From Ascidiella aspersa (taxonomy: Eukaryota): a stretch of DNA of 64,000 nt. A program made the translations under genes and the position numbers. Under the pieces are notes generated by a model, which made no database searches, was not told where the DNA came from, and was given only the letters and a program-made list of their open reading frames with translations. The DNA is taken from contig OZ004610.1 of the NCBI GenBank assembly GCA_963924565.1, forward strand, positions 31,372,001-31,436,000, read 5' to 3'. Of this stretch, positions 7,716-44,861 are shown one piece after another. Position 1 is the first letter of the stretch. Each line of letters begins with the position of its first letter.

Positions 7716-10700
7716 ATGCGTCGGATTTTCACCGATCGTCCGCCGAGAGACTTTCTACTCCTCCGAGTTCTCCTGCTCGCCGTTACGTCATGTCTAGTGA
7801 CGTCATCCAGTGGCTCCAAGGCGCTCAAGCTGTCTGTGAAAGAGAACACCGCGATCGGTAAGCGGAAGCCAGATTTGTCACAAGGCCAGGCGCCTGACGA
7901 GGCTTTAAAAAATAGGTCGTCTTTTTTTCGAGCGATTGAATTCATTTGGCAGACAATCTGACGCGATTGCCTTTTTATCGTTTCCGTTAGATTTTAAGGT
8001 TTATATTTAGAACTTCCTGAAGGGCCACGGCCGCCAAATTTTGACCAGCAAATAGTCTGGTTAACTTAGGGGTTCATAAGTGTTAAATTAAAAATAAACG
8101 TTTTTGCATTGGATGTATATTTAGACTCTTTTGCGCTTTCACATTTGTTTTGCCGAAAACAGCAGATTTTTTAAGTCTATCAATTTATGACTTCATCTCT
8201 AAAGTTTATTGCCTAAACTGGTCGAGCAAAGCAATTTTTTTAGAGGTCTGCGGTAAAAAAAAGTTCAAGAATCCCTGAGTTAACTGATTAGGTTCTGACG
8301 AAAAGTTGTGTAGCCCTGAAAAGTAAAGTGCCAGTTCTAACGCATCATCCTTCCTCCAATCCAACAGGTACCACGGTGGTTGAGCTAGCCGACATACTGG
8401 ACATACAGACCAGCTCTAAGAAGACCTTCCAGCTGCTGGACGAGAAACTGAAGTCAGTTGGCTACAAGTCGGCAAGTCGTCGCAATCGCAAGTGGCTGGC
8501 ACTGGACGAAAGCTCTGGAAGACTGACCGTTCGCCACCCGCTAAACCGCGAGGAAATGTGCCGGGACTCGAGGCGATGTGTTATTCTTATGCAGGTGTGG
8601 AGCACTTAGAATTGTCAGTTTAGTTTAACGATCACTAACATTCGTCGAAGGATTCACTGAACTGTCGAAGCTACAAAAATATACAAAGTACCTAAATCAA
8701 GCTTTCGCACAACCGCGCTTCATCAACAAAAAGTAGAAATAAATACTTTTGACCTGATGAAGCACGGTTGTGCAAAATCTTGTCAAGAATCAACACAATT
8801 TGTCTTTATATATTGCGATTTTAATATTAGGTCTTTATGTATGTCTTTCAAAACATTTTAATCATGATCTCGATATTGGCACTAAAAATGTTACTTAACC
8901 AAGTGATTTTATTCAACCGTGCTTCATCAGGTCAAAGTAGAAATATTAGGCAAACACTGCCATATACAAAGATCAGGTTTTGTCAGTTCACGGCCGATCT
9001 ACAGCAGTCGTTTTTTTGGGGTATAGCGCAAAAACAAAAAGCCGTCATATTGAAGTGCTCTGTATTATTCTAACGCCCGGCTCTCGTTTTGTTTCTCTCC
9101 TTTTGGCGAAACAGATCTACGTGCGAACCGATTTCCGCATGGTCAATCTCGAGATCGCGGTGTTGGACGTAAACGAGCACGCGCCCGTCTTTCCAGTGCG
9201 CTTCGCCCTGCTGAACGTGAGCGAAGAGGCACAGAAGGGAGACCTGTTCAGTCTCGACCGTTACCTGGCTCGGGACCGCGACGCAGGTAAAAACAACTCA
9301 CGATTTTTTTACCCTGACTGGGTAAAATTTAGGAACAAAAACCTACTGAAGCTTTGTGTTTTTGCTACACAACACAAATCAGGTTTCTAATTTGGACAAA
9401 GCATAGAAAATCTGTAAATTCCTTCTTTTCTGTGGAATGTAGAGATGCATTGATATAGAATGAATGCTTTGATATTCAACCATGCCAAGCAACTATTAGT
9501 TTATCTGCTTTGTTGTGTCAAATGCACAGAAATGTTGCCGGCCTTTTTTACCCTGACCATTTGGTCGCCTTATGTGGCCGTTTAAAGTGGGCCGTAACGT
9601 TTATTTAACATCGCTCAAGTGTCTTTTCACATATAGTTAATTACACCTTATTTATTGTTGCGTGCATTTATTCTGGCCACTTGGATTTAGAAACTCCGAA
9701 GCGAAAGCGAAATTGAAAGAGGTTGTATGTTGTTGCAACTATTAATAAAGCTACGCGCTAAAAATCTAGTTATCTGGGGATTTATCCGTTATGTCGCGGC
9801 CTTTGTGAAGATATTTAAAATATTGTTACAACTGTATTGCACATCTGCTGCTTTTTGCTGTTAACCTATTCAGCCTTGACCGATACCGACACCGTGACGC
9901 AGGTAATAACAGCGACCGCAAGCAATATACGCTCACGACGCCACTTTTCGCCGGCGTGTTGCTGTAATGAATAATGCACGGCTACTGACATATGCTTGCG
10001 TGCAGGTTTGACAAAATTTATTCTGTTCCAGGCAACAACTCGCAGATCACCTACGCACTGAGCCCGAGCAATTACTTCGCTCTGATCCAGTCGAGTGATG
10101 AAACGGGAAGCCAGCATCTGCAGCTTCAAGTCAAACGCGCCCTCGGTGAGTTTCTTCTCCCAGTTTCTTCGTGTTTTCTGTCGCCGCGTCGTAATCGGAT
10201 ATCGCATGTCAAGTGACCGTGTTTGTGGCTTGCCCCCTCTTCTTGAAACCGCGCCGTCGCCCAATCTCGAACGCTTGAAATTTAACGTGACGAGGGTTCT
10301 TCTGGGCTAACTGCAAGGGGGGCTTGGGTAAATGAAGACGCTAAAAATCTTCGCACGGCTTTCGACTGTCAATGTCGGCCACTCGATCCGAACTGAGCGC
10401 GATTAAATGCTCTGTCCTTAACCCTGAATGCCTTACATCGCGCGCAGGAGACGTGCAACTAATTGTATCTTTTTGTCTTGCGTTGCGCAGATTTCGAACG
10501 AAAGGCTGTCTTCCACTTGATGCTTAGCGCTGAGGACCGAGGCGAACCAGCGCTCTCAAGTAAAGTGCCGCTGCAAGTTCGAATCATCGACGAAAACGAC
10601 AACAGACCAATGTTCGACCAGGAGGTAAGTTATCACCACCGCGAAAATTAGACGCACCGATGTTTGAACGTATCGTGTCGCATGTAACATTATCGCCAAT

Positions 10701-13700: not shown

Positions 13701-16700
13701 TCCACAACATAACCTTGCCATCCAACAGAACTCATATTGCCGACGATAAAAGTTCTAAAAGTTTATAATAGCTTGAGAAGAGCACCGCCTTAAACAAATG
13801 TCAGTCAGCAAGGTCTAAAAACTTTTAATAAAAATGCATTTCGCCATATAAATGAATGGCATTATCAGTTTATCTTGTTCAAATAGAATTTTTTTATTTG
13901 GCGAAATGCATTTTTATTAAAAGTTTTTAGACCTTGCTGTCTGATTTTTGTTCGATACGGTGCGCTTCTCAAGCTGTGATACTTTTAATTCTAAGACGCA
14001 AAACCAAATCGCAAGCAACAACATATAGTAAAATCTCTTTCGCCACCAGGTGACCATCATTGCGTCCGACGGCGGTCGCAAGAGTGCGCTCAGGAGCAGC
14101 TGCGAGCTGATAGTGACAGTGGCCGACTCGAACGACAACGCGCCGGTTTTCACCAACCCGGCCCGTGACGACATGACAATCTACGCAACCATCGTGCGTG
14201 ATGACGTCATCACACGTATACAGGCGGTGGATTATGACGTAGGAGCGAACGGCGCGGTCAAGTACCGTTTGACGAAGGAGGACGGGGTGCTGATCACCGG
14301 TTTTGTCAACTCGTCCCTGTTTATCGTTAACTCGACGACCGGTGATTTGAGGTTGAACATGAGCACGCCAAACTTGAGTCAGTCACTCGGCGAACATGCA
14401 ATCGAAATCGAGGTGTGTATATTACTATTTAAAACAAACTTGGTATACTTTTCAACAACGAGTCTTGCCTTTCATTTGAGCATATTACGCCGGCGATAAA
14501 AATTATAAAATTTTAATAAGCTTGAGAAGTGCATCGCTTCGAATCAAAATCAGCCAGAAGCTGTAAACCCTATTGAAATACAAAACATGCATTTTGAAGC
14601 GGGCGCTTCTCAAGCTTATTGAAAATAAATGTGCAAATTACTATACCGACATGCTTTATGGTATAATGCTGGGAAAAAATTGCCGGAGAACAACTATTGA
14701 CTCGATGTGAAAAACTTCAGGAGCGATAGACCGTAGTGAAGTATTAACGTTTCCACCTTAAGCAACTTACTTTAGCGATTTTGTTACGATGACAAAGCAA
14801 ATTTAACGCTTGACTTGTTACAACTCACCAGGCGCGTGACGGCGGCCAGCCAAGCATGAAGAGTCAGCGACGCGTGACCGTGATCGTGACCGACCAGATT
14901 GTGCTTCCGACTGTGTTCGCGATGCAAGAGGAGGTCACACCCTTCACCGCCAACTCTTCATTCATTATCATCATAGCTGCTCTTTCCTCCGCTCTGGCGC
15001 TCCTTTTCCTTGTCTCTGTGGTGGTTGTGTGCAGATGCAGAAGGGAAAATAAGGTGAGGACATTTTGATCACTGTTTCGTTAAAGGTGTTTAATTAAAAT
15101 ACAACAGCTTACTCCCTTTTTCAGTAAAGGTTTTTATCTTACCTATACGCAAGTTACGCATTACTGAAAAAGAAGTAAGCTGTTGTATATTAATCTTTAC
15201 AAGTAATAATCATTTCAAAGCCCATACAGAAGGTATAGCTCAAATAATTATTCGAAACGTTTAAAATGCTACCTACTTCTGTATGGGCTTCGATATTTTA
15301 TTACGTCTTACTACAAACTCCAACCATTATGCTCCAATCTTAACAAGCTTTCTCACAACCGTGCTTCATCAGGTCAAAGCAAGACCTTAGTAAGCATTAC
15401 AATATAATTTGTTTAAAATGTTTATATTTTTGTTGTACAGGTCGAAATGTTTTCGCGATAAAATTAGTGAAAGTTATCAAAAAATTATAAACAAGCCAGA
15501 TAATAACTTTATCCTTCGAATGACGAGTCTGATTGTAATTTCTGTCGGCTTGATTTGTGTACATTACTTTTAAAACGCCGAAAAAACAGTTTTTACGTTT
15601 CCTGAATATACTCTTCGGCGATCAGCCACTTAACTGCTTTCCCAACCTTTTAAAATCGTATCGCCATGCTGAAATCGCACTGACGCTGTAAAGCAAGGCT
15701 GCCCAGTGCTCATATAGCTAACAGAAAACGCATCACTGTAACTGCCTTCATATAACGTTTCTATTCCTTACTCCAATCGCAGAAAGTGCGAACGTACACA
15801 TGCAGCAAAGCGCACGAGGACAGGCGCAGCTCGGCTGATGTCCTGCACGAAAAACCTGCGGATCTGACCCGATCCACCTCAAAAGAAAGTCTAAAGGGTA
15901 GCATCGCTTGGAGCCAATCGTCCAACAAAAGGTAAACGATACATAAAGAACATTTTATCTCTAAAAATTCGCATATCTACCTATAGCCACACCCTTACAT
16001 ACGCGAAGTCCAGGTCTGTGTCGTTAAACCAGGCGTAATGAACTTCGCTTTTGTCCAACAGGCAGCACTCCTTGACGTACGACTCGACCACGGACGTGAC
16101 CAACCTGTCAAGAAGCGACGCGGTCGTGTCTCGCCAATTCACAAGCTCCGGAGCGAGTCTAGAAGGACAGAATGCAACGTTACTCAGTGGACAGGTGGGC
16201 TGGCAGATAATGATAGTTGCTTCCGGGAGGTTATATTTCTAGCATTATTTGAGTTACGTTGCAAGTTAAGGTTTGGGTTTGTCAAGTTTTTTATTCTCTT
16301 ATATTTTTTTTCTTTCTTGCGATTTCAATTTTGATAACTGGTTTAGTTACTGTAAAACAATTGGTTGAATTCTAGACCAGTGCCACTTTCTAAATATACA
16401 GTCCTGGTTACCACTTTATACAGTATTCCTAAAACGAATTTCCTCACTATTTATGAAACGACTTTAACCTTATAAATTTATACGTCAGGAGATTTACCAT
16501 TGCATCTGCCGATTACTAGCGATCCTTTGTGCCACAGTTATGTTTATGTATTAGATTATAACCTGATACAATTTGCATTGGCAGAGCGCTACCAGCAACC
16601 TAAAAGATCGACCGCTGGCCTCATCATCACACCACCACGAAGGTGACAGCGGTCACGGCGACAGCGAGCCTGACGTCACCAGTGGTGACGTGTCGTTTGA

Positions 16701-22400: not shown

Positions 22401-22848
22401 GATTACTAAAGGATACGGTGTAAGTTAAACGTTTTGTCAACAGAAACCAAATAGGCGCATTTATTTACTTAGCTTAAGCTGCATAGTTTTACACCAGCTA
22501 TTTCGAGAACAGCACGCTTGGTAAGACTATACTTAAATTAGTGCGTCACGTTATGACGTAAATTGTGACGTCATTTGTAAGAATTTATATATGCCCCTCA
22601 AAAAACTAAAATCCTTGATCCGCCCCTGCAACATTGGCCAGTCATATGAAACAAATGCCACTGATCGCCCGCGAAAAAATAAATTCGGATCACGATAATC
22701 TGAACAAAAGTTTTTCCACTAGGCACATTTTATAATCCCTTAGACAAATTTTATATTTTTTGCAAAAAAAATTGATGTTTTAACTAAAACGAAGGAAAGT
22801 TTAAACATTTTCTAAAATTTTATGACAGTATATTTCAGGAAGTAAAAA

Positions 22849-25800
22849 ATGAAAATAGCAATCATATTGTTGCTACTTGTTTGCATCAGTCTTTGGAAAA
22901 CCACTAAAGCCAAAGGCATTCCGACAAATAATAATGAATTATCAGAGAGCTTCATAAACAGTGGTTCTTCTGGAAGCGTTGAAGATAATGATGGATCTCC
23001 TGTAGGATCTACAAATGGTGGGTCTCCTGGAAGCGTTGAAGATAATGATAGATCTCCTGTAGGATCTACAAATAGTGGGTCTCCTGCAAGCGAGGAAGAT
23101 AATGATGGATCTCCTGTAGAATCTACAAATAGTGGGTCTCCTGCAAGCGTTGAAGATAATGATGGATCTCCTGTAGGATCTACAGAGAGTGGATCTCCTG
23201 GAAGCATTGAAGATAATGATGGATCTCCTGTAGGATCTACAAAGAGTGGTTCTCCTGAAAGCGTTGAAGATAATGATGGATCTCCTGTAGGATCTACAAA
23301 GAGTGGGTCTCCTGGAAGCATTGAAGATAATGATGGATCTCCTGTAGGATCTACAAAGAGTGGTTCTCCTGAAAGCGTTGAAGATAATGATGGATCTCCT
23401 GTAGGATCTACAAAGAGTGGTTCTCCTGAAAGCGTTGAAGATAATGATGGATCTCCTGTAGGATCTACAAAGAGTGGTTCTCCTGGAAGCGTTGAAGATA
23501 ATGATGGATCTCCTGTAGGATCTACAAATGGTGGGTCTCGTGGAAGCGTTGAAGATAATGATGGATCTCCTGTAGGATCTACAAATGGTGGGTCTCCTGG
23601 AAGCGTTGAAGATAACGATGGATCTCCTGTAGGATCTACAAATGGTGGGTCTCCTGGAAGCGTTGAAGATAACGATGGATCTCCTGTAGGATCTACAAAG
23701 AGTGGATCTCCTGAAAGCGAGGAAGATAATGATGGGTCTCCTGTAAGATCTACAGAGAGTGGGTCTCGTGGAAGCGTTGAAGATAATGATGGATCTCCTG
23801 TAGGATCTACAGAGAGTGGATCTCCTGGAAGCATTGAAGATAATGATGGATCTCCTGTAGGATCTACAAAGAGTGGTTCTCCTGAAAGCGAGGAAGGTAA
23901 TGATGGGTCTCCTGTAGGATCTACAGAGAGTGGGTCTCCTGGAAGCATTGAAGATAATGATGGATCTCCTGTAGGATCTACAAAGAGTGGTTCTCCTGGA
24001 AGCGTTGAAGATAACAATGGATCTCCTGTAGGATCTACAAATGGTGGGTCTCCTGGAAGCGTTGAAGATAACGATGGATCTCCTGTAGGATCTACAAATG
24101 GTGGGTCTCCTGGAAGCGTTGAAGATAACGATGGATCTCCTGTAGGATCTACAAAGAGTGGATCTCCTGAAAGCGAGGAAGATAATGATGGGTCTCCTGT
24201 AGGATCTACAGAGAGTGGGTCTCCTGGAAGCATTGAAGATAATGATGGATCTCCTGTAGGATCTACAAATGGTGGGTCTCCTGGAAGCGTTGAAGATAAC
24301 GATGTATCTCCTGTACGATCTACAAATGGTGGGTCTCCTGGAAGCGTTGAAGATAACGATGGATCTCCTGTAGGATCTACAAATGGTGGGTCTCCTGGAA
24401 GCGTTGAAGATAACGATGGATCTCCTGTAGGATCTACAAATGGTGGGTCTCCTGGAAGCGTTGAAGATAACGATGGATCTCCTGTAGGATCTACAAATAG
24501 TGGGTCTCCTGCAAGCGTTGAAGATAACGATGGATCTCCTGTAGGATCTACAAATGGTGGGTCTCCTGGAAGCGTTGAAGATAACGATGGATCTCCTGTA
24601 GGATCTACAAAGAGTGGATCTCCTGTAGGATCTACAAATAGTGGTTCTCCTGCAAGCGTTGAAGATAATGATGAATCTCCTGTAGGATCTACAAATAGTG
24701 GGTCTCCTGCAAGCGTTGAAGATAATGATGGATCTCCTGTAGGATCCACAAAGAGTGGATCTCCTGGAAGCGTTGAAGATAACGATGGATCTCCTGTAGG
24801 ATCCACAAAGATTGGGTCTCCTGTGGGATCTACAAAGAGTGGTTCTCCTAAAAGTGATGAAGATAATGATGGATCTTCTGTAGGATCTACAAAGAGTGGA
24901 TCTCCTAAAAGTGATGAAGATAATGATGGATCTTCTGTAGGATTTACAAAGAGTGGGTCTCCTAAAAACGATAAAGATAATAATGAATCAACAAAGACTG
25001 GATCTCCTGGAAGCAATAAAGATAATGATGGATCGCCTAAAAGCGCAACAAATAGTGGATCTCCCAAAGGTGATAAAGAAAACACTACATCTCCTAGAAG
25101 TACAAAAGATAACATTGGATCTTCTGGAAGCGCAACAAAAAGTGGATCTCCTAAAGGTGATAAAGATAATAATGGATCTTCTGTAGGATCTACAAAGAGT
25201 GGATCTCCTAGAAGTACAAAAGATAACAGTGGGTCTTCTGGAAGCGCAACAAATAGTGGATCCCCTAAGGGTGACAAAGGAAATAATAGTTCTCCTGGAA
25301 ACGCATCTCCTTCGAGCACAAAACAGAGTACATCTCTTGCCAGCCATACAAAGACCACTAAATGCCATGATGGTACAACACATAGTAGTGCATCTTCAAT
25401 GGACGACAACACTAGTGGATCACCGGGTAGCACAAAAGATAAGAGTGGATCTCACAAAAGTAGCTCAGACGGCTCTAAAAGTAGCAAAGACAACAAGAGT
25501 GAAAGTCCGAAGTCGCCTTCGCCACACCCAAATCACTCCAGTTCCAACAAGCATGGTAAATTGCATGCATTGAAACGTCTTAACTTAAATTTCGGGTGTA
25601 AACTAAGGGCTTATACTTCCATATTATATAATCCAAGTGGCACGTATTTTTCGAATGGCCTTTTGTTTTGTGGACAAACAACTTTTTATGGCTCTCTTTT
25701 TATAAATAACCCAGAAAAGGGAGTTTCTAAACCTTTAAACGCTGTTCATTTTTGCGTTAAGTTAAGATAAACATATGTAAATTAAAACGTATATAGCCCA

Positions 25801-28975: not shown

Positions 28976-29403
28976 TTTTATATGGCTGGAGTTTTTTACG
29001 AGTCCTACGGTACCGCATATTTGCAAGCCATTCTAAGTTATATATATAGCTATGCCTCGTGATGCTTTTCGCGATTAGTTCAACGTGGACCGGCACACCA
29101 ACATCCGATTGCGCAACAACGCGCTTTAGGTGAAAGTTGAGGCGAGTTTCCGTCTGAGCGTTTAAATATGTACGGTAGTCACGGCGACGCAACCAGTTAA
29201 TCGATCGGCGAGTTAAACGAAAGCGTTTAGCCGTGGCGTGGTCCCGTGGAACTGCACCTGCAAAAACAGTTCCCTTGTCGTCTCTAGGCGATTTCAAAAC
29301 AAAAACTCAAACTGGCGAGAATGCCTTTCAGGGCTAATTTCATTAGCGCCGATAAAAACCAATGACGGTGCGAAAATGAAGGTCCTTTCTCCGTCTTTAG
29401 GGA

Positions 29404-29410
29404 TATAAAA
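29404..29410 (+). promoter_or_regulatory. TATA box of the SOD-fold gene
   Basis: TATAAAA about 65 nt upstream of ATG 29472, which starts a signal peptide. Confidence 0.55.
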
Positions 29411-29471
29411 GCGAGTTGGGGAACGGTAATAGCATTCTCGTTTTGACCTGGAAACTGAGTGAAGTGGTGCA

Positions 29472-32400
29472 ATGGAGGGAAAACGTTTCCTTGAAGTTTT
29501 TGGGATTCTCGTCCTGTGTCTCTGTGGTTTAGTTCGGTCTGATGCAGGTAACTATTGTGATTTTTTTTTTAATTTGAATTTAAAAATTAGTTACAAAACT
29601 ACAGAACAACTGAAAATAAACGGGTCGTAAGCTTGATAAATTTACCGTATGACACTGTGTTTTGACTATAAAGCAAAGGAATTGGAAACCACTCCGTTCA
29701 CAGAATTTTTCGTAAGAGAACAGACTTATATTAATTTTATATTAAGTTAATGTTCCATATTAAACAAAACGAAAGACCAAATGAATGATTTTTACCTAGA
29801 GCGCATTTTTCGTACGGTTAAAACCGCTTGATTACACATGACTTTAACTTTTAATTAGAAATAGATAAAAAAATCGGAATCATTGCACACAGTTATGCAT
29901 TTTTCGGTAATGTTCCCCAGTTAAACATATATGTTGTCTAGCGCTTTAATCAACTAATATGTACCTACATTACAAATCGGCACATCGAAAAAAGTTGAGG
30001 AACGCATAAAAAAGGAATAACAATAACCGTAAAGTTTCTTCAAAATTAAAAAAAATTACTTAGTATTTGGTTTTCGAAACCAATATACCTAACATAAAAA
30101 CGCATGTTTTCGCAGACGCATCACCAGGAACTCCCGTCGCCGATGCTCCAGGTGTGTTAAAAAAGCAAAACATAACAAGTTTTTCGTTTATTCACTATTG
30201 CGCTACAATTTGTAACCGTGCGACTTAAATTTTTTAATTGTTTGAACCGAATGGAGTCCCTATTTATCTAAATCAGGGCTTCTTAAACTGGGGTCTATGA
30301 ACCCCTTGGGGGTACGTAAAATAATTTTAAGTGGTCAATGAGGCCCTTGTTGAAATATTAGTGTATATTTGAAAAGTAATGTATTTTTCAAAGAAACGTG
30401 TTGAATTAAAAATAACACGTTTTTGCACTGAATGTATTTTAGACTCCATTGCGCTTTTACATTTTTTGGACCCGCAACAGCAGATTTTTAAAGTTGTATT
30501 GTGACATCAATTTCTGCCGTTATCTCTAAAATTCCTTGCCTACACTGTTCCACGCGAAAATTTTTTTTTGTTACAGGACTGCGGTAAAGAAGTTTAAGAT
30601 CCCCTGACCTAAATATATAACAGACATGCGACCCCTACAATAAGTTTTTGCTTATCATTTTAATATTATTAACTTTATACGACTATGTACACTAAAGACA
30701 ATTAAACATAGCAGAGCTTTGTGTCATTTTGGTTTGCGTTTTTGTTACTCTAGTACCTGGATTAATGGCCGCACTGAGCTTGCCCGAACCAATGCCAGCT
30801 TACGTCGAAGAAGCAGGTGTTTTTTTAATCATAAGTGTCGTACTGTGTTGGTGTTGTCGTTACCTAATTGAGTATAGCAGACAAATGGGAAATGAATATA
30901 AATTTTCTTTTTTTTTATTTAATGTTATGGCTTTTCTTTATATCAAAAATTTAACATAAATGAACACAATTTAGAGGGGTTTAATTACTATAAAAATTGT
31001 TTTAAAAAAAATAATGTATTTTTATCCGTTTATTCAACACGCCAATGAATTAAAAAATCCAGATAAAATAACAACAATTCGATTTCGGTAAAAAGCGCAA
31101 GTGTACTTTACCTATTTGACACTAATCAAATTTTAGGTACAAAAATGTTGACTAAATAGTCTCCCTCAATCAAGTCAAATGTGTCATAATAACAAAGGTT
31201 TTTTCCGCAACAGGACATTTCGTAAATGTAGCGTCGATAACTTATTTAAAGAAAGAATGTAATAACTTATCGGAGGTGTTTAATGCTGACATTATATGGT
31301 CGTTTATCACTAAACCCTGTTGTTTGAATTTAGTTGCCATAAAGGGCGGGGCAAACTTCGACAACGACGTTTTTGAGGGCAGCGTTACGCTTTCTCATGA
31401 ACTGGCTGACGGTGCGATGACAAAGGCAATGGTGCAATGGGATGTGAAGGGAGACTCGGCGGTAAGAGGTTTTACTTTCTTAGTCGAAGTGTATAAGTTA
31501 TTCTAAGCCAAACTTTTAACGGATGCCAGCCATAAGACCGAGATAAGAACAATACCAACGTCGAAATAAAACAAAATTCGGAAAAAAGGCCAAAATAGGA
31601 CTAATAACCTAATGGTATTAGTACCGTTTAAATCGGAATAAGTCCTAAATCCGTCGGAATAAGACCTAAAATGTCAGAATAAGGCCCAAACAACACTTTA
31701 ACTAACCCTAAACCCCACTCCTTAGTACACCACAAACTCCCTTAATAATTTCAACACTAACCAATTCACTTTTTAGTCGAAGTGTACAAGTTATTCTAAG
31801 GTAAAGTTATAGCATTCTGTCAAACATCTGTTGATTTGATTTTTATTATTGGCTAAACGTGTTTTGTCAAAAAAAAAGCCTAATACAGGTTTAAAACGGC
31901 AAAAAAGTGAACGGCAATAGAAACCAAAAATAGTACAAAACTATAGCATTAGCAGGTGTTATATATGTCCATTGAGAAAACACGTTTTTTGCGATTGTAT
32001 TTCTTCACAGCGTTTGATATCTGAGTAACAGCTGTTGATTTAATTATTTATAGCTAAATGTGATTTTGTCAATTTTAAAAAGCCTAGTACATATCGAAAA
32101 AGGAGCCAAAATACAAAGCACCACGTTTTTAGTACATCATTAACTAAGGCTAAATGTGCTGATTTATTTTGGAAACTGTAATTAAAATACGGCCACGCAC
32201 ATATTTTAAGCACATTTTTAAAGGAAACGGCCACGGTTTACATCAGCAAACTTGGTGCAACGGTTGAACAGTGCGCAGAGGGATATATCGCAGAAAATTA
32301 CAATGCAATCACCGGAGAAATCACGATCCCAGTGTAAGTAAATACTGTATATCAAAAAACATTCGTTCGAATTAAGATATATTGACGATGTCTTTGCCGG

Positions 32401-35400
32401 CGAATTATTTATATATTTTTTAAAATCTTTTTAATAGTGTCTGGTCTGAATAGCTATCTTGGTTAGATTTTGTTTCTGTTTCAAAAAAAGCAACAAGTAA
32501 AGTAGGTTAAAAACGACGCGGAATGTACGACGACTGATTCACAGTGGATTCTTTAAGGCTTTTAAACGGAGTAACAATACGTAATTTAACCAAGCCTATT
32601 TTAAAATATACTTTTGCTGCCAGGCATTGTTTCAATTGTAAAATTGCTCTTCCGGCAAAATTGTTCTTTCCGTTGGTAAAATTTTGCCGAAAGAACAATT
32701 TAACAATTGACAAAACTAAAAATGTTTTTCAACACAATGAGAAGATAAAACATGTTAATAAACTACGAACCGCTTTATCGAACCATGTACATTTTGTTAC
32801 AAGCAAAATATTGTTTTTATTTTTAGTGACAAGCCGGAAAATGGTGTAGAGGTGGATCTATCGATCAACCTCAATCTTACTGGCGGCGAATACTCAGGTA
32901 AGAAAACGATTTCATCGAGTCACACTATATAAAACCAGGGATGCGGAGTCGGTTAATTATAACCGGCTTAAAATAAACCTGAGGCTCAGGTAGTTTAACG
33001 TGGAACTACTACTAAAACCAGGGCTGCCCAGTTATCATTGAATCACTTTGTACAAATTACTCTGTTTTTCTAAATGAGAATTTTAAAGGTATTTTGTCGG
33101 CCTGGCCTAACCTCTAGCAAAAGAGATATTTGCAAAACAGCTTTTAAAATTATCTGTTTTAATATATTTTTTCAATTGCAAATTAAAATTGGGTAAACGT
33201 ACCGGATTAAACGCACCACGGGCGCGAATTCACATGTAAACATTATTTTGCAGTAAATGCTTAATGTTATTTGCTTTAGGATAACGTCAAACAACTGCTG
33301 TGGATGGGTCACTTTGCAATTTTACCAAACAAGTCTAGATACGCTAACCTTCGGTTTTATGTTGTTGTACAGTTTGGGACAAAGTTTTAGCTGTCAAGAT
33401 TGGCGGACAGCTTTACTGCTCAAGAATCGGCATCAAGGATAGCGAGGGTTTGCAACAGATCAAGTGGCGGTTCCCTTGCAGTATGGGAAGAAATGGAGAT
33501 TGGTACGACTAACTTTTCCTAAAACACTTATTTGCGCTGCGTTAACGTAGAGTAACTAAAGGGATTTTTGTAGTAACGGGGAATTTAAACTGATTGATTC
33601 AAGTTCGGATAACGGCAAAGATTTTGCACTCATTTCAAACATACCTTAATTATTTCTTTCCGTGAGTAATGTCGGATTCTGTTTTTACTCGGGTTTTTAA
33701 GCTTTGAGTTTTATTGTTAACATACGCATCAGCGGAACAGTGATCGACAAACTTAAACCTGCTGCCAATGGTTTTGGATTTCATAGAGATACGCCCTTTA
33801 ACACATTACTTATTTGTTAGCACGCCAAAATAGTCAGGGGCCATGCAGTAAATATGTCCGTTGAACTACAGGGGCTCGTTCGCTGACGCATTGAATGCGG
33901 CGGGATTGTCTATGAATGTGATACAGCCAGTTACATACAACGGAGAGTGGATTAGTGAAGGGGAAGATGGCTGCTGCTTCACGAAAATGCTCATACAAAA
34001 AAGCATCAGTAAGCGTTCGCATTCGAATCTAACGTTATTTTTACTGAAAGACATCATATCTGTAAAGGGATACGCTATGCACGGGTCTGTAATGTAGTTT
34101 GATAATAATAAATGGCAAAGCCAATAAAGTTAAGATCTTAATTAAGACGTTTCAAAACGAATTGTATAATCTTTAGTTAGTGTCATCTTCAGTTAAACAT
34201 GAACTAAAGATAATACAATCTCGTATCAAAACGTTTTAATTAAGATGATGTCGATCTACTTACCCTTTTTGGCTTTGTAGCCTAATTCATTATCAAACTA
34301 AATATTTACAAAGTTTACACCTTGTTCATACCATTTTTGTGGCCTTATTTCTAATTCTAAATAGGGTAATCAGGTGGCACTATATTAACACAAATTGTAT
34401 TGATTTTTGACAAGCTTTCGTAAACCGTGGTTCATCAGCGTTTTACTTGACCTGATGAAGCATGGTTGTGCGTAAGCTTTTAGAGAATTTAATACAATTT
34501 GTCTTTACATAGTGCCACCTGATTACATTGTTCATAGTTAAATATATAGTTCAGCCACAAACACAAATGATTAACGCAAAACCTTCGGTCGTCTGTACCA
34601 CCTGGATAAAGTAAGAATGTTTCGAAAAGCTTTATCTTTACGTATGGGTGTCGTTTTTTATCATGAAAGTTTTAAGTTAAGTTCTATCTAAATTTTTGTA
34701 ACCTCGACAGTTCCGAATCGAAGATATTGGTAATAAATTTCTACTTAAAAAACGATTATTTGGTTGTCAGGTCCGCACACAAGCATTTAAAATAAATCAC
34801 TAATCATGTATAAGATCGACCGAGTTGGATTTTAAAGACACAATGGATCACAACATTTTTTGACAACTGGCTTGAAACACACAAATACATGTCTGTGATT
34901 TATAAAAAAAACAGTCGCTAAGTGTCGCGCGAGTGCAATACAAAGTTCGATTAAAAAAACAGCATTATAACAAAAAAACAGTAAATAAAAGATTGGATTT
35001 TAAATTTAAATATTAAATCGAATCGGTAAATAAGCTTTTAAATTTGATTTCGTGATTGATTTGAAATAATGGACAGATTTATAATATTCCCCGATTTATT
35101 TTTTTTAGATAAGGCAGATAAGGATCTGATCAACAACGCAGCACAACCCGGCAAATTCGGCGTTTACTCAGCGACCAACATTTGCAAAGTCTATTTTGGA
35201 AATTCGGGTAAGACCTGTTTGGAAAATACGTTTTATCATAATATATACGCACCTTAAAAAAAACTTTAAAATATTTATACATTTTTTTGAAACGAACCAA
35301 GGAACTCTTGCGCGATTTCAGGGGTTGTTTCTTGTCGCTTGAAACATTTAAAAAATCCAATAAAAAACTTGCTTAAAAACAATCCTTGTTTCAATATTAA

Positions 35401-37229
35401 TTTATAAACAAAGCTCGAAACACTGAAATACATATAAAAAAAAACGCTTGCTAATAAAACAACGTATGATGCCTCTGAAAGGCTTACCAAAATTAGCCTA
35501 ATCAGGATTTTAGAAACGGCTTGATTACAGGTTACACACATTATACACAATGTCGCTTACTCACTTTCCAGTATTGCATGTAATATTCGTATTTTTGTGT
35601 AATATATGCCATTAATTTATTTTCTTAGAACTTTAAACTAAAACTTAAAACCTTAAATTTAAAACTAAAACTTGAAACTAAAACTTCTAACTGGAAACCT
35701 TAAACTTAAAACTAAAACTTGAAACTTTGATCGCAGTCTTGAAGGATTTCGCAGAAGAAATGATGAAGGATACCTCGAGCAAAGAAACTGACAAATACGA
35801 GCGACCAACGCAGCAAACGAGCTGCAGCAGTGGTGGAAACGGTGCGGCCTATCGCCTTTGGAAAAGCAAGTTCGATGAGTGGAACGCTGCGTGGAACAAC
35901 TACAAGTACGACAGCGGAATGAGCATTGGCGGGCAGCAGTGGGGAGACGACAGTTACTATGGCGGAAGTCAACCTCAAAAGCCTGTCACCGCCATTGACC
36001 AGCTGCTGTACGATTTTGGCTTATACACCGCTGAGAAAATGGAGGAAAGAAAGCAGGAAAGCATCCAGGCGCTCGAGGTTTCGATCTCACAAATTAAAAG
36101 AGGTGAAGACTTGCGTCACGTCGCTAACGACATCGTCACCACGCTGTGGACACAAAACGAGTGGGTCCGCAAACCTGAGGAGGTCAAGGCAGTCATGAAA
36201 GAGATCCTTTGCCGCATCGTGGGTAGCCCTAACGCTGAAGAGGCCGTCGGTCGCATCAGGACTCTTCTACAGGGTCTGCAACCAGGTTCAATGGACAACT
36301 TGGAGGAAGTGTTGGATAGAATCATACGCTATTCGATTCTCAGGGCCATTGAGTCGAAAGACTACGGTATGATGGTGCGACAAGTCTTTGCCGACCGTTC
36401 CAGAACCGAACTCCTGCGCAAGAAGTTTCTAGAAGGACTCGGTCTTTACGGCGCCAAGGAAGCCTTCACGCACTTCTCTGTTGACGCCTTCGCCGATGGT
36501 ATGATAAGCCAGGCGAACGCCTTCAACCAGACCGTCAAACTCTTCAGGGAAATGGACTTACACAGCGACACTCAGCACATCTTGCGTGCGGTTGCCAACC
36601 TGACTGGACGTTTCACACACCAGGTCGTCGACAACTTGGCTGACATCATCAAGAACACCGAAGCCGAAGTGGAATTGAACTATTTTATCGAGCACGCCAT
36701 TAACGACGTTATCAAGTTCGGCAACGCTTCGTTTACCGCTGATCTGAAGAAGCTGCTCCGCGACGACGCCCAGTATCCAATCAGTGGCTTCCCTCTGCGC
36801 CTGATGATCTTCCTTATCCAGCCAGAACGGGAGTCCTGTGACCTGGAGGCTCTTAAAGAATACGTTCCACGTCGTGACGACTGGGACATGCCGGAACCAG
36901 TCCCGACCCCGGGTTGGGAACAACCTGGATGGTCAAACAACTACGGAAGCCTGCCGAGATACGACCAATGGGGAGCAGGTAACGCCTGGGGCGGGCAAGG
37001 ATATCAAGGTAACAACAGGCAGGGCCAAGTCCAGGGCGGTTGGGAGCAGCCTAGACGATCCAACAACTATGGAAGCCAGCCACAATACAACCAATGGGGA
37101 GCGGGTAACAACTTTGGTGGACAAGGATATCAAGGCAACAACATGCAGGCGCCTCAGTTGAATCGCTACCAAGGACAGCAACGATACGGCGGGAACGGGA
37201 ATAGAAACGGAGGCTTTAACGGCTGGTAA
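29472..37229 (+). CDS. Secreted protein (~780 aa): degenerate Cu/Zn-SOD-like domain, Cys-containing domain, helical region and G/Q/N/Y/W-rich tail
   Basis: Hand-spliced exons 29472-29547, 30116-30151, 30754-30816, 31334-31461, 32224-32333, 32827-32897, 33373-33502, 33872-34008, 35109-35207, 35737-37229. Total 2343 nt, open frame, all GT-AG, phases compatible. Signal peptide MEGKRFLEVFGILVLCLCGLVRS; AATAAA at 37543. The SOD-fold assignment is by eye. Confidence 0.85.
30274..30606. mobile_element. hAT-type MITE (degenerate relative at about 8008-8277)
   Basis: TIR cagggcttcttaaact / agtttaagatcccctg; TSD atctaaat/acctaaat. Confidence 0.85.
34095..34300. mobile_element. Palindromic hammerhead-like repeat, family D
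   Basis: Arms combine to the consensus TTAA CTGAAGA T GATAC-loop-GTATC GAAACGTY TTAA; each arm alone is degenerate. Confidence 0.55.
34351..34535. mobile_element. Palindromic hammerhead-bearing repeat, family A (longest copy)
   Basis: Inverted arms of about 90 bp centred near 34442, each with a degenerate CTGATGA-stem-GAAAGCTT-GTCAA motif. Family members also at 18708-18765, 44648-44773 and 53758-53868. Confidence 0.75.
35628..35728 (+). repeat. Low-complexity AAACTT/AAAACT microsatellite-like run before the last-exon acceptor
   Basis: Repeated aaactt/aaaact units are visible directly. Confidence 0.7.
36912..37142 (+). repeat. Two imperfect coding repeats with 126-nt period (GWEQP..SNNYGS.P.Y.QWGAGN..GGQGYQGNN)
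   Basis: Copies start at 36912 and 37038 in the last exon. Confidence 0.9.
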
Positions 37230-43049: not shown

Positions 43050-44861
43050 CTATAAGCCCCATGGCCTCCACATACCGCCCTGTTGCAAGTTCTCGACCTT
43101 TATGGAAACGCCCTTCGATAAAACACGGCCGTTGTTGGCGGAAGCTTGCTCTGTTTTGGAGATTGGCGATGGAGGGTTTGAACCCGAAGACCAGTGGCCC
43201 GAGTCGCTGCTTACGTAATGATAGTGAGCGCTATCCTTGAGAAAACGGGGCTTGCGTTCAACGACCGGGGTAACAGGGGAGAATAACGACCCTGTGTTGG
43301 GGCAGGGGGGTTCGTGTGTTGCGTCTCCAATAGAGTCCTGTGACGTAGACGAGAGGCTGGGTGACGCGATTTGGCGGTAAGCTCCCGGCGAAACAGTGGA
43401 TGGGTTGGAGATAGGCGACACTGGAACTGGCGAAAAGGGGCTGGCGCTGTGAAGGGCGGGTGGGCTCGCGGCCAGCGACAAGTTCTGCGTGCTGCTGCTG
43501 ACGTCAGCCGCTAGGTATGACGTCACGTTACCGAATGAGGCTCCGCTGTCGTCCATGGCGACGCGGCCTTGCGCCCGTCTGCGCAGGTCTAGCTCGGTGA
43601 TGAGACGCTTTGGGAATGGTTGGACTTGCGGTGGTGGATGGCCGCGCTTTCGTTTAACAGCACGAGGTGCTTCTACCGCGGAATTGCATCTGTTGGTGAG
43701 GTGGACTAACAACTGAGTGCGACAGCCCGGTGAAATTCCATCTTGGCTATGGCTCATGTAAGCAGCCACGTCCCTCACACATTGCTCGTAACCGGCACGA
43801 CGCTGGTTTACGGCGCCGGAGTCTGAGTCGTCATTGGCCGCTGCTACGCTGCTGATGTCTTCATTGCAGCTGATCGACAAATCTGTATTAGAAATAAACG
43901 TTTAGTTTAATAAAGAATACTACATTGGAGTTTGGTATTAAAATATATCCTATAGTTCTTATTATATTTTGCTAACTAAACCACGTTAGATATCGCGGTT
44001 AAATACAAGACTTCGTTAGAGCTGGTTGACAAATCTGCGTTAGGGATAAACGTTTAGTTAAATGCAGAATATGATCCTAGTTCCAGTATTATATTCGCTT
44101 AACTAAGCGCGTTCGTTATCGCAGTTAAATACGACCACAGGATGATTACGATTTTTTTAATTACTATAGTGCTATCAATGATGTGGAATAAAGATCATGG
44201 TTGGTCATTTGATAAGCAGATATTTTCGTATATGAACATGTACTCACCGATTGCTAAAGGCTTCGTAGTTTGAACGCTCTTCAAATATCGAACAGTCATT
44301 TCCAGAATATCTGCTTTCTCCAGTTTGTTGGGTCGAGACTAAATATAGCAAAAATAAGTTTTAAAATTTAGCCAAGCAAGTTATTATAATGAAAATATTT
44401 CAGAACTGATAATAATTAATGTACGTTAAAACATATATTTTAAAGTACTTACGTCTTCGGATACTGATTTCAAAACGATCGACTTTAAATCTTCGAGGCA
44501 GTTATTGATGCGTTCGCGGCGCTTCTTTTCCATGATTGGTTTGTTGGTCTAAAACAAAAATAATTCGTTACTACAATGGTCGAATCTGTTTGTTTAAAAG
44601 GAATAAACTTAAAAAATACATACAAGTACTGTTATACTATCAGCTAATTAGGGTAATCAATTGGTACTGTATAAAAACAAATTGTATTAAATTCTTGACA
44701 AGCTTTCGCACAACCGCTTATCGAGAATTGATAATTTTTTTCTATATAGTGCCAACTGATGAACCTATTTATAGAACTACGTTCATATACAAAGATTTAT
44801 GAGCTAAGAATCTCACCTTGCGTCGCATTTCAGCGTCAGTCATTCTTCTCTCTGGGGGCAT
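43050..44861 (-). CDS. Hes: Hairy/E(spl)-family bHLH-Orange transcriptional repressor, 4 exons, ~354 aa
   Basis: Minus-strand exons 44817-44861 (MPPERRMTDAEMRRK), 44453-44548 (TNKPIMEKKRRERINNCLEDLKSIVL), 44248-44338 (KLEKADILEMTVRYLK), 43050-43882 (Orange domain AGYEQCVRDVAAYM...LLVHL; ends WRPWGL*). Basic-region Pro and intron positions are typical of Hes genes. Minus-strand AATAAA at 42739-42744. Confidence 0.95.
44648..44773. mobile_element. Family A palindromic repeat (partial hammerhead) in Hes intron 1
   Basis: Matches the arms at 34351-34535 but retains only the GTGCGAAAGCTTGTCAAG half. Confidence 0.7.

What the first reader, a model, noticed from the sequence alone, without database searches (positions are those of the whole stretch)
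31334..33502. Hidden multi-exon secreted protein with an apparently metal-less Cu/Zn-SOD fold
Exons 4-7 splice to ..IKGGANFDNDVFEGSVTLSHELADGAMTKAMVQWDVKGDSAETATVYISKLGATVEQCAEGYIAENYNAITGEITIPVDKPENGVEVDLSINLNLTGGEYSVWDKVLAVKIGGQLYCSRIG. This follows the SOD1/SOD-repeat pattern (A.F...G.V.F.Q....T.V.V; HxH..G...C....HYN; GDL; L.L.G..SI.GRS.V.H; C..I) and keeps both disulfide cysteines. Every Cu/Zn histidine position appears replaced (HxH to YIS, HYN to NYN, distal H to K) and the Zn and electrostatic loops are short. Established: SOD-derived, catalytically weak or inactive extracellular proteins exist (e.g. bivalve cavortin/dominin/pernin). Inference: a pseudo-enzyme SOD scaffold repurposed as an extracellular-matrix (tunic/mucus/adhesive) module in an architecture I do not recognise.
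Basis: partly seen in the sequence, partly recalled or inferred. Interest (0 to 1): 0.75.

Follow-up and report, generated by a model that had tools for sequence, protein, structure and literature searches.

The report
Sea-squirt secreted gene, SOD fold unproven
The four exons belong to a real, secreted, sea-squirt-specific gene without metal-binding histidines, but its claimed descent from copper/zinc superoxide dismutase rests on one short matching motif and could not be properly tested here.

Summary
Exons 4-7 (31334-31461, 32224-32333, 32827-32897, 33373-33502) are AG/GT-bounded and in phase within a 10-exon, 780-codon gene on the + strand. They contain 1 His and 3 Cys.

The gene looks real. 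A second species (L009) has equivalents of exons 4-10, and exons 4-7 show the same intron phases there. Ciona savignyi has a fragment of the C-terminal domain.

The SOD reading is not established. Searched exon by exon:
- Pfam Sod_Cu, PDB sequences and the genome-wide PF00080 scan find nothing.
- Exons 4-6 score no better than shuffles.
- Only exon 7 matches the last SOD strand around the disulfide cysteine. hhalign gives 58% probability and 0 of 250 shuffles reach it.
- The best local hits of the four exons are colinear with SOD1 (P about 0.001). That is weak against roughly 25,000 possible families.

I put SOD descent at about 0.35. The scan had not noted this before on other DNA.

The parts
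29472..29547 (+). Exon 1: ATG plus a signal-peptide-like 25 codons
   Evidence: GT follows and there is no stop. The signal peptide is judged by eye only.
30116..30151 (+). Exon 2: short Pro/Ala-rich linker
   Evidence: AG before, GT after, phase fits.
30754..30816 (+). Exon 3: linker leading into the module
   Evidence: AG before, GT after, phase fits.
31334..31461 (+). Exon 4 (42 whole codons, 1 His): first part of the beta-rich module
   Evidence: It has no paralogue in the genome. Its best local hit on the SOD1 profile is at positions 2-30, but the score equals the shuffle mean.
32224..32333 (+). Exon 5 (36 whole codons, 1 Cys)
   Evidence: The local hit puts its Cys on profile column 57, but the score is at shuffle level. 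The counterpart is L009:1571-1666 with the same phases.
32827..32897 (+). Exon 6 (23 whole codons)
   Evidence: hhalign places it at SOD 91-111, but 15% of shuffles reach that score.
33373..33502 (+). Exon 7 (42 whole codons, 2 Cys): predicted hairpin carrying the only SOD-like motif above chance
   Evidence: - hhalign: 58% probability at SOD columns 135-153; 0 of 250 shuffles reach it.
- HMM: 0.8% of shuffles reach its score.
- AF2 of the exon alone: strands 3-9, 12-19 and 29-34, pLDDT 62.7.
- 28% identical to L009:2060-2182, with both Cys kept.
33872..34008 (+). Exon 8 (45 whole codons, adjacent Cys pair)
   Evidence: tblastn to L009:7899-8030 gives E 2.2e-4, and the two are 30% identical.
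35109..35207 (+). Exon 9 (32 whole codons, 1 Cys)
   Evidence: A likely counterpart lies in the L009 open frame 8373-8504, judged by eye.
35737..37229 (+). Exon 10: orphan all-helical domain of about 400 aa, a Gly/Gln/Asn/Trp/Tyr-rich tail with a 126-bp repeat, and TAA
   Evidence: -.
- Only two homologue clusters among 1.84 billion representatives.
- No Pfam family above cut-off.
- AF2 gives pLDDT 37, all helices.

Best explanation
This is a real, single-copy, secreted protein gene, so far matched only by Ciona savignyi and one unnamed species.

Shown:
- The gene has ten exons and 780 codons.
- Exons 4-7 encode about 125 residues with no cluster of metal ligands.

Inferred:
- A signal peptide and a short Pro/Ala linker precede this stretch.
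- The stretch is a beta-rich module, probably held by a disulfide between the exon 5 Cys and the first exon 7 Cys.
- Two Cys-containing exons follow, then an orphan all-helical domain of about 400 residues and an aromatic/Gly/Gln/Asn-rich tail.

The module cannot dismutate superoxide, because it has one His where a Cu/Zn site needs six His and an Asp (recalled). I take it to work as a non-catalytic extracellular binding or assembly module that presents the helical domain and the sticky tail. This function is inference.

Its ancestry is unresolved. It may be a lineage-specific beta sandwich, and the link to Cu/Zn SOD rests on one short C-terminal motif.
For: - Gene model: all splice sites and phases fit, with no stops.
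- The gene is single-copy: exon 4, exon 7 and the C-terminal domain each match only themselves in the 308-Mb genome.
- Conservation:
  - L009 carries the C-terminal exon at 41% identity (E 9e-65) and exon 8 at E 2e-4.
  - Open frames in L009 match exons 4-7 with identical intron phases and similar sizes (32/32/22/41 against 42/36/23/42 whole codons).
  - Both exon 7 Cys and the adjacent Cys pair of exon 8 are kept.
- Ciona savignyi H2YEZ8 matches the C-terminal domain (E 5e-24).
- The organism is ascidian-like: its SOD1 exon is closest to Phallusia, Clavelina and Ciona among named hits.
- No metal site: 1 His in exons 4-7.
- Beta-rich: AF2 of exon 7 alone gives three strands. Alternating hydrophobic stretches in exons 4-6 are seen by eye.
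- No family recognises any exon.
Against: - No expression evidence. The only RNA run gave 99 laid reads, 90 of them only partly on the stretch (88% of what was laid runs on into sequence unlike it). There were no exon-exon joints, with about 6% of the run read.
- The signal peptide and the disulfide are inferred, not predicted by a tool.
- The exon 5 Cys of the two species was not aligned by MAFFT.
- The acceptor of the L009 exon 4 counterpart is uncertain.
- Exon 7 does resemble the last SOD strand well above shuffles, and the best hits of all four exons are colinear with SOD1. 'Unresolved ancestry' may therefore simply be undetected SOD descent.
Confidence: 0.55

Rival explanations
1. One reading: exons 4-7 are a far-diverged Cu/Zn-SOD-type eight-stranded barrel. 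It would be most like the Cu-only SOD / CSRP type, which lacks the Zn site and the long loop VII. It would have lost every metal ligand but kept the disulfide, and been reused as a non-enzymatic extracellular scaffold.
For: - Exon 7 (window plus L009 as a two-row profile) against 110 SOD1 sequences: hhalign probability 58%, E 1e-4, columns 135-153. The observed score is 26.8 against a shuffle mean of 9.8, sd 2.2, max 21.7; 0 of 250 shuffles reach it.
- The same motif is found independently in the L009 exon, at HMM positions 138-151, ranking 2nd of 713 six-frame segments of that contig.
- The best local hits of exons 4, 5, 6 and 7 on the SOD1 profile fall in order (2-30, 46-58, 60-64, 141-154). 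The Cys of exon 5 and the first Cys of exon 7 land on the profile's two disulfide columns.
- In shuffles, that order occurs in 2.1% and order plus total score in 0.13%.
- hhalign puts exon 6 at 91-111 with 45% identity to one SOD1.
- The exon 4/5 intron (phase 0, before the strand that carries the first Cu histidines in SOD) coincides within about a residue with a phase-0 intron in one repeat of this genome's own SOD-repeat gene.
- Cu-less SOD-like domains that keep barrel and disulfide are known in CSRP (PMC13017621, section 8 read).
- The exon-wise test has low power: genuine His-less CSRP exons of this genome score only 4.5-6.0 bits on the same HMM.
Against: - Pfam's unbiased scan of 24,736 families gives 0 hits for each of the 4 window exons and each of the 4 L009 counterparts, even at E 10.
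- The PF00080 genome scan gives 5 hits elsewhere and none here.
- PDB phmmer gives 0 hits for all 4 exons.
- Exons 4, 5 and 6 are at shuffle level in HMM, Smith-Waterman and hhalign tests. The fraction of shuffles reaching the observed score is 0.33/0.30/0.36, 0.44/0.35/0.78, and 0.58 for exon 4 and 0.15 for exon 6.
- The exon 6 hit that makes the order colinear (60-64) is not the one the SOD alignment expects.
- At least 12 of 2864 six-frame segments of the window score higher on the SOD HMM than exon 7 alone.
- L009 exons 4-6 land at non-colinear positions.
- There is no similarity to CSRP-locus frames beyond a control set.
- The Atlas look-alikes of exon 7 are short-chain dehydrogenases at 0.87, which is noise.
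- P about 0.001 for one family is weak when the family was chosen after seeing the sequence.
- Only one of three introns is shared.
Confidence: 0.35
2. The model is not a functional gene: either a decaying locus or a chance chain of open frames with splice-like sites upstream of a real single-exon gene (exon 10).
For: - No RNA junctions were obtained.
- Database proteins cover only the last exon (P0001, P0122).
- tblastn did not find exons 4-7 in L009; they were placed by eye.
Against: - Ten exons have canonical sites, fitting phases and no stop.
- Exon 8 is found by tblastn in L009 (E 2e-4).
- The L009 counterparts of exons 4-7 share all four phase pairs and near-equal lengths, with conserved Cys and a conserved Trp-x-Phe-Pro-Cys motif.
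- Exon 10 has no in-frame ATG near its start that would give a signal peptide, so a secreted product would need the upstream exons. This last point is inference.
Confidence: 0.05

Closest known systems
[quoted passage not shown]
   Same: These are extracellular and have no Zn site, no long loop VII and no Cu ligands. Barrel and disulfide are said to be kept (PMC13017621, section 8). The window module likewise has no His cluster, short segments where the two loops would be, and two Cys at the matching places. This genome has such SOD-repeat genes with His-less repeats on contig C3.
   Different: CSRP has 4-12 tandem SOD-like domains. Here there is one module, joined to an unrelated helical domain. 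CSRP exons of this genome are still seen by the SOD HMM at 4.5-29 bits; the window exons score from -1.9 to 2.0 bits. There is no direct similarity beyond the control.
CCS domain II (copper chaperone for SOD1)
   Same: It is a SOD-derived domain that lost its Cu site and is fused to other domains (abstract of PMC13017621). This genome's intronless CCS is at L003.
   Different: CCS domain II scores 138 bits on Pfam Sod_Cu and is intracellular (recalled). The window module is not detected and sits behind a signal peptide.
Bivalve cavortin / dominin / pernin
   Same: They are abundant extracellular proteins with Cu/Zn-SOD homology but no SOD activity (passages of PMC6530089).
   Different: Their SOD domain is recognisable by sequence homology according to that paper; this one is not. 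They are plasma proteins of molluscs, and no link to ascidians was found (search listing).
Ciona savignyi H2YEZ8 (uncharacterized protein, 218 aa) and the unnamed P0001 cluster
   Same: These are the only detectable relatives of the gene. They match the helical C-terminal domain at 32% and 40% identity.
   Different: Both entries lack the N-terminal module. No function or name is attached to either.

Membership tests
Cu/Zn superoxide dismutase superfamily (Pfam Sod_Cu, PF00080) | Significant match to the family profile | tested here: inconclusive
   The test was done on single exons only. There were 0 Pfam hits at E up to 10 for the 4 window exons and the 4 L009 exons, and no hit in the window in the PF00080 genome scan. 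Only exon 7 beats shuffles on my own SOD1 profile. Power is low: true His-less CSRP exons score 4.5-6 bits.
Cu/Zn superoxide dismutase superfamily (Pfam Sod_Cu, PF00080) | Eight-stranded Greek-key beta barrel | not testable with these tools
AF2 of exon 7 alone gives a hairpin plus a third strand at pLDDT 62.7. That fits any beta sandwich.
Cu/Zn superoxide dismutase superfamily (Pfam Sod_Cu, PF00080) | Copper ligands (four His) and zinc ligands (three His, one shared, plus Asp); ligand list recalled | tested here: not met
   There is one His in all of exons 4-7. In the local alignment, the profile His columns 46 and 48 face Tyr and Ser.
Cu/Zn superoxide dismutase superfamily (Pfam Sod_Cu, PF00080) | Conserved intrasubunit disulfide (loop after strand 4 to strand 8) | tested here: inconclusive
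   The exon 5 Cys falls on profile column 57 and the first exon 7 Cys on column 146 in separate local alignments. However, a Cys drives such alignments, and the exon 5 score is at shuffle level. The exon 7 Cys is conserved in L009. An exon 5 Cys is present in both species but MAFFT did not align them.
Cu-only SOD repeat proteins (CSRP) | Four to twelve tandem SOD-like domains with short linkers (PMC13017621, section 8) | tested here: not met
   There is one module only. Exons 4 and 7 have no second copy in the genome, and the rest of the protein is helical.
Cu-only SOD repeat proteins (CSRP) | Sequence similarity to CSRP repeats of the same genome | tested here: not met
   phmmer --max of each exon against six-frame segments of 50 kb of the C3 SOD-repeat loci gave top scores of 4-9 bits on frames that are not the SOD exons. 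These are no better than a control set from the window.
Cu-only SOD repeat proteins (CSRP) | Shared intron positions | tested here: inconclusive
   One of three introns matches: phase 0, just before the strand carrying the first Cu His, in one CSRP repeat on L013. The other two do not. CSRP splice sites were read from candidate site lists, not from transcripts.

The most novel reading that the evidence does not exclude
A single Cu-only-SOD-type barrel that has lost every metal ligand but kept its disulfide was recruited in ascidians as the N-terminal module of a secreted protein. Its partner is an orphan helical domain found so far in only two other species. This would be a SOD-derived pseudo-enzyme in a new fusion, outside CCS and CSRP, and so diverged that only its last strand is still recognisable.
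Probability: 0.33. Interest if true: 0.55.

Novelty: new variant of a known kind. Interest (0 to 1): 0.3.

Why it matters
If the SOD descent holds, this would add a third way of reusing the Cu/Zn-SOD barrel without metals: fused to an unrelated domain, in the closest invertebrate relatives of vertebrates. The known ways are CCS and the Cu-less CSRP repeats. It would also show how far such a barrel can drift once the metal sites are gone.

If it does not hold, the locus is still an unannotated, taxonomically restricted secreted protein with two unrecognised domains. That is of ordinary interest for ascidian genome annotation.

Tried and rejected
- Looking for a natural, unspliced or annotated full-length relative that could be folded legitimately:
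  - Word-indexed search with the last exon found 1 hit, P0001.
  - Exhaustive phmmer over 1.84 billion representatives found 2 hits.
  - A profile search found 1 hit.
  - None of these carries the N-terminal module.
- Paralogues in the genome: none.
- Atlas look-alikes: noise for exon 7 and nothing for the C-terminal domain.
- AF2 of the C-terminal domain gave pLDDT 37.2, so no fold search was run on it. Fold search was not used at all.
- RNA support: the only RNA run gave no joints.
- Similarity to this genome's CSRP exons: none beyond control.
- Rejected idea: that the C3 SOD-like hits (L004-L006) are intermediates between SOD and this module. They keep the His-x-His motif and belong to ordinary SOD-repeat genes.
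- Literature: a search for SOD-like proteins in ascidians/tunicates (listing only) showed nothing on a metal-less SOD-like ascidian protein. That one search is the only basis for saying none is in print.
- Supplementary Table S1 of PMC13017621 lists CSRP species. It could not be opened and may say whether tunicate CSRPs are already recorded.
Full report
**The sequence.** Reading 29300-35900 and checking by script gives a ten-exon model on the + strand:

| Exon | Coordinates |
|---|---|
| 1 | 29472-29547 |
| 2 | 30116-30151 |
| 3 | 30754-30816 |
| 4 | 31334-31461 |
| 5 | 32224-32333 |
| 6 | 32827-32897 |
| 7 | 33373-33502 |
| 8 | 33872-34008 |
| 9 | 35109-35207 |
| 10 | 35737-37229 |

Every internal border is AG...GT and the phases fit. 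No whole-codon stretch holds a stop. The lengths sum to 2343 nt, which is 780 codons plus TAA. Exons 4-7 hold one His and three Cys. Exon 1 reads as a signal peptide by eye; no predictor was available.

**Rule followed.** The spliced model was searched exon by exon. The joined step (assembling, searching or folding the spliced protein) was left out throughout.

**Is the gene real?**
- The genome (308.6 Mb, 75 contigs) holds exon 4, exon 7 and the C-terminal domain once each.
- The C-terminal exon has very few relatives:
  - 1 hit of 7797 candidates in the word-indexed search (P0001, 41% identity).
  - 2 hits among 1.84 billion representatives by exhaustive phmmer (P0001 at 3.5e-60, P0122 at 4.9e-24).
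  - 1 hit with a profile.
- P0122 is the Ciona savignyi entry H2YEZ8, an uncharacterized 218-residue fragment.
- The genome's own SOD1 exon is closest, among named proteins, to Phallusia (74%), Clavelina (71%) and Ciona (69%). The organism is therefore most likely an ascidian.
- A 16-kb metagenome contig of the P0001 species (L009) carries the last exon (tblastn 8.8e-65) and exon 8 (2.2e-4).
- tblastn did not find exons 4-7 there.
- By reading the frames I placed counterparts at L009:1134-1229, 1571-1666, 1748-1813 and 2060-2182.
  - They have the same four pairs of intron phases as window exons 4-7.
  - Whole-codon lengths are 32/32/22/41 against 42/36/23/42.
  - The acceptor of the first one is uncertain.
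- Exon 7 is 28% identical between the two species, with both Cys and a Trp-x-Phe-Pro-Cys motif kept.
- Exon 8 is 30% identical, with its adjacent Cys pair kept.
- MAFFT did not align the exon 5 Cys of the two species. A four-residue gap would align them, but that is my reading.
- I take the gene as real (about 0.9).

**Expression.** No listed holder of the stretch is on record as RNA. One RNA run of the same species label was laid, with about 6% of it read.
- 99 reads were laid and 90 lie only partly on the stretch; 88% of what was laid runs on into sequence unlike it.
- Unique parts have a depth of 0-2.
- No exon-exon joint was seen.
- This neither supports nor refutes the splicing.
- The DNA run confirms the sequence at a depth of about 50, and shows intronic repeats at depths in the thousands.

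**Unbiased tests of the SOD reading, exon by exon.**
- Pfam: 0 families for each of exons 4, 5, 6 and 7 at E up to 10, and 0 for the four L009 counterparts.
- PDB sequences: 0 matches at E up to 10 for each of the four exons.
- A scan of the whole genome with PF00080 gave five matches and none in this window:
  - a SOD1 exon (L002);
  - an intronless CCS (L003, 260 residues);
  - three exons on contig C3.
- The Atlas look-alikes of exon 7 were short-chain dehydrogenase fragments at 0.87, which the tool itself rates as a lead only.

**Directed tests of the SOD reading.** I built an HMM from 110 of the 120 SOD1 proteins, keeping those of 140-175 residues.

| Test | Exon 4 | Exon 5 | Exon 6 | Exon 7 |
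|---|---|---|---|---|
| hmmsearch, filters off: score in bits | -0.3 | -1.1 | -1.9 | 2.0 |
| Fraction of 500 shuffles reaching it | 0.33 | 0.30 | 0.36 | 0.008 |
| Smith-Waterman on profile log-odds: best hit position | 2-30 | 46-58 | 60-64 | 141-154 |
| Fraction of 1000 shuffles reaching that score | 0.44 | 0.35 | 0.78 | 0.003 |

- Exon 7 aligns to HMM positions 139-153, the last strand with the disulfide Cys.
- The L009 exon 7 counterpart scores 3.7 bits at 138-151.
- hhalign of the two-species exon pairs against the SOD1 alignment:
  - Exon 7: probability 58%, E 1e-4, columns 135-153.
  - Exon 6: columns 91-111, E 0.17.
  - Exons 4 and 5: noise.
- Column shuffles:
  - Exon 7: observed 26.8 against a mean of 9.8, sd 2.2, max 21.7; 0 of 250 reach it.
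  - Exon 6: 15% of 150 reach it.
  - Exon 4: 58% of 300 reach it.
  - Exon 5 was not shuffled.
- In the Smith-Waterman alignments, the exon 5 Cys falls on column 57 and the first exon 7 Cys on column 146.
- Drawing random quadruples of shuffles, the colinear order arises in 2.1%, a sum of scores at least as high in 6.8%, and both in 0.13%.

**Caveats on these tests.**
- The exon 6 hit at 60-64 is not the placement that the SOD alignment expects.
- A Cys pulls any exon towards a Cys column.
- The family was chosen after seeing the sequence.
- Against the six-frame background of the window, at least 12 of 2864 segments score higher on the SOD HMM than exon 7 does alone. In L009, the exon 7 frame ranks 2nd of 713.
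- The L009 counterparts of exons 4-6 land at 57-66, 85-101 and 50-54, which is not colinear.

**Power of the exon-wise test.** The C3 loci turned out to be two multi-domain SOD-repeat genes. On the same HMM:
- Their His-bearing exons score 8-29 bits.
- Exons of repeats that have lost the His score only 4.5-6.0 bits, close to the noise top of 5.7.
- A blank for single exons therefore does not refute a far-diverged SOD origin.

**Comparison with this genome's SOD-repeat genes.**
- The window exons show no similarity to the C3 frames beyond a control set.
- One intron coincides within about a residue with a phase-0 intron of one C3 repeat: the window's exon 4/5 intron, phase 0, just before the strand that carries the first two Cu His in SOD. 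The other two introns do not coincide.

**Structure.**
- AF2 on exon 7 alone (two rows) gives strands at 3-9, 12-19 and 29-34, with mean pLDDT 62.7 and about 70 over the first 20 residues. This is a tight hairpin with the Cys in the second strand, plus one more strand. It fits the last two SOD strands with loop VII cut out, and it fits any other sandwich equally.
- AF2 on the C-terminal domain (four rows) gives only helices at pLDDT 37.2. This was too poor to search.
- The Atlas had nothing for the C-terminal domain.

**What is known.**
- Cavortin, dominin and pernin are SOD-homologous bivalve plasma proteins without SOD activity (passages in PMC6530089).
- The review PMC13017621 (outline and section 8 read) describes three derived forms:
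  - CCS, in which the Cu site is lost;
  - fungal Cu-only SODs;
  - animal CSRP.
[quoted passage not shown] The first one or two repeats have also lost the Cu site.
- A metal-free SOD-like barrel with short loops is therefore a known kind.
- The new element would be a single such module fused to an orphan helical domain, and its extreme divergence.
- One listing search found nothing on such a protein in ascidians. The review's supplementary table of CSRP species was not available to me.

**Verdict.**
- Observation: confirmed.
- Gene: real, secreted by inference, single-copy, restricted in range, non-catalytic.
- SOD descent: possible (about 0.35). It rests on the exon 7 motif, colinearity and one intron. 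It is not supported by any unbiased search or by exons 4-6.
- The most likely description is a disulfide-braced beta-rich extracellular module of unresolved ancestry that serves binding or assembly.
- The fold of the spliced module would settle it in one step.

Noticed in passing
window 22846-25767 (+): A single open frame of 974 codons starts with a signal-peptide-like stretch. It is followed by about 36 copies of a 57-bp (19-residue) Ser/Gly/Asp/Pro-rich repeat at 90% match. There is a Pfam hit to Bflower_2 (71 bits), which may be driven by the repeats. It is a second secreted, repetitive protein gene about 4 kb upstream.
   Followed up: partly
window 43053-43901 (-): An open frame carries a Hairy_orange domain (31.9 bits, above cut-off) and a WRPW motif three residues from its end. 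It is likely the last exon of a Hairy/E(spl)-type repressor gene.
   Followed up: partly
window 14032-14496 (+) and 8950-9387 (+): These are cadherin-repeat-like exons (Pfam Cadherin 24.8 bits, just under the cut-off, for the first), suggesting a cadherin or protocadherin gene in the first quarter of the window.
   Followed up: partly
window about 31480-31760, 32550-32750, 33550-33950, 34100-34530 (introns of the gene): These stretches reach word depths of thousands in the DNA run, against about 50 for unique sequence. They attract nearly all RNA reads as partial matches, so they are high-copy repeats.
   Followed up: partly
G000:C3:33870001-33935000 (L010-L014): There are two neighbouring multi-domain SOD-repeat (CSRP-like) genes on opposite strands. 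They have at least four repeats each by HMM hits, and some repeats have lost the Cu histidines.
   Followed up: partly
L003 (G000:C6:25601037-25604420): An intronless 260-codon copper chaperone for SOD: its C-terminal half is a Sod_Cu domain (138 bits on Pfam), and its N-terminal part reads by eye as a metal-binding domain. The genome's SOD1 (L002) has most of its coding sequence in one exon.
   Followed up: no
window 35624-35727: An A/T-rich microsatellite (period 7, 13 or 27, CTTAAAA-like) ends about 10 bases before the acceptor of exon 10. One DNA contig shows a 7-base deletion at 35715, so the tract length may vary next to a splice site.
   Followed up: no
window 36912-37149: The tail of the protein is a 126-bp unit repeated 1.9 times (81% match), encoding a Trp/Tyr/Gly/Gln/Asn-rich 42-residue repeat. 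The P0001 homologue lacks this tail.
   Followed up: no
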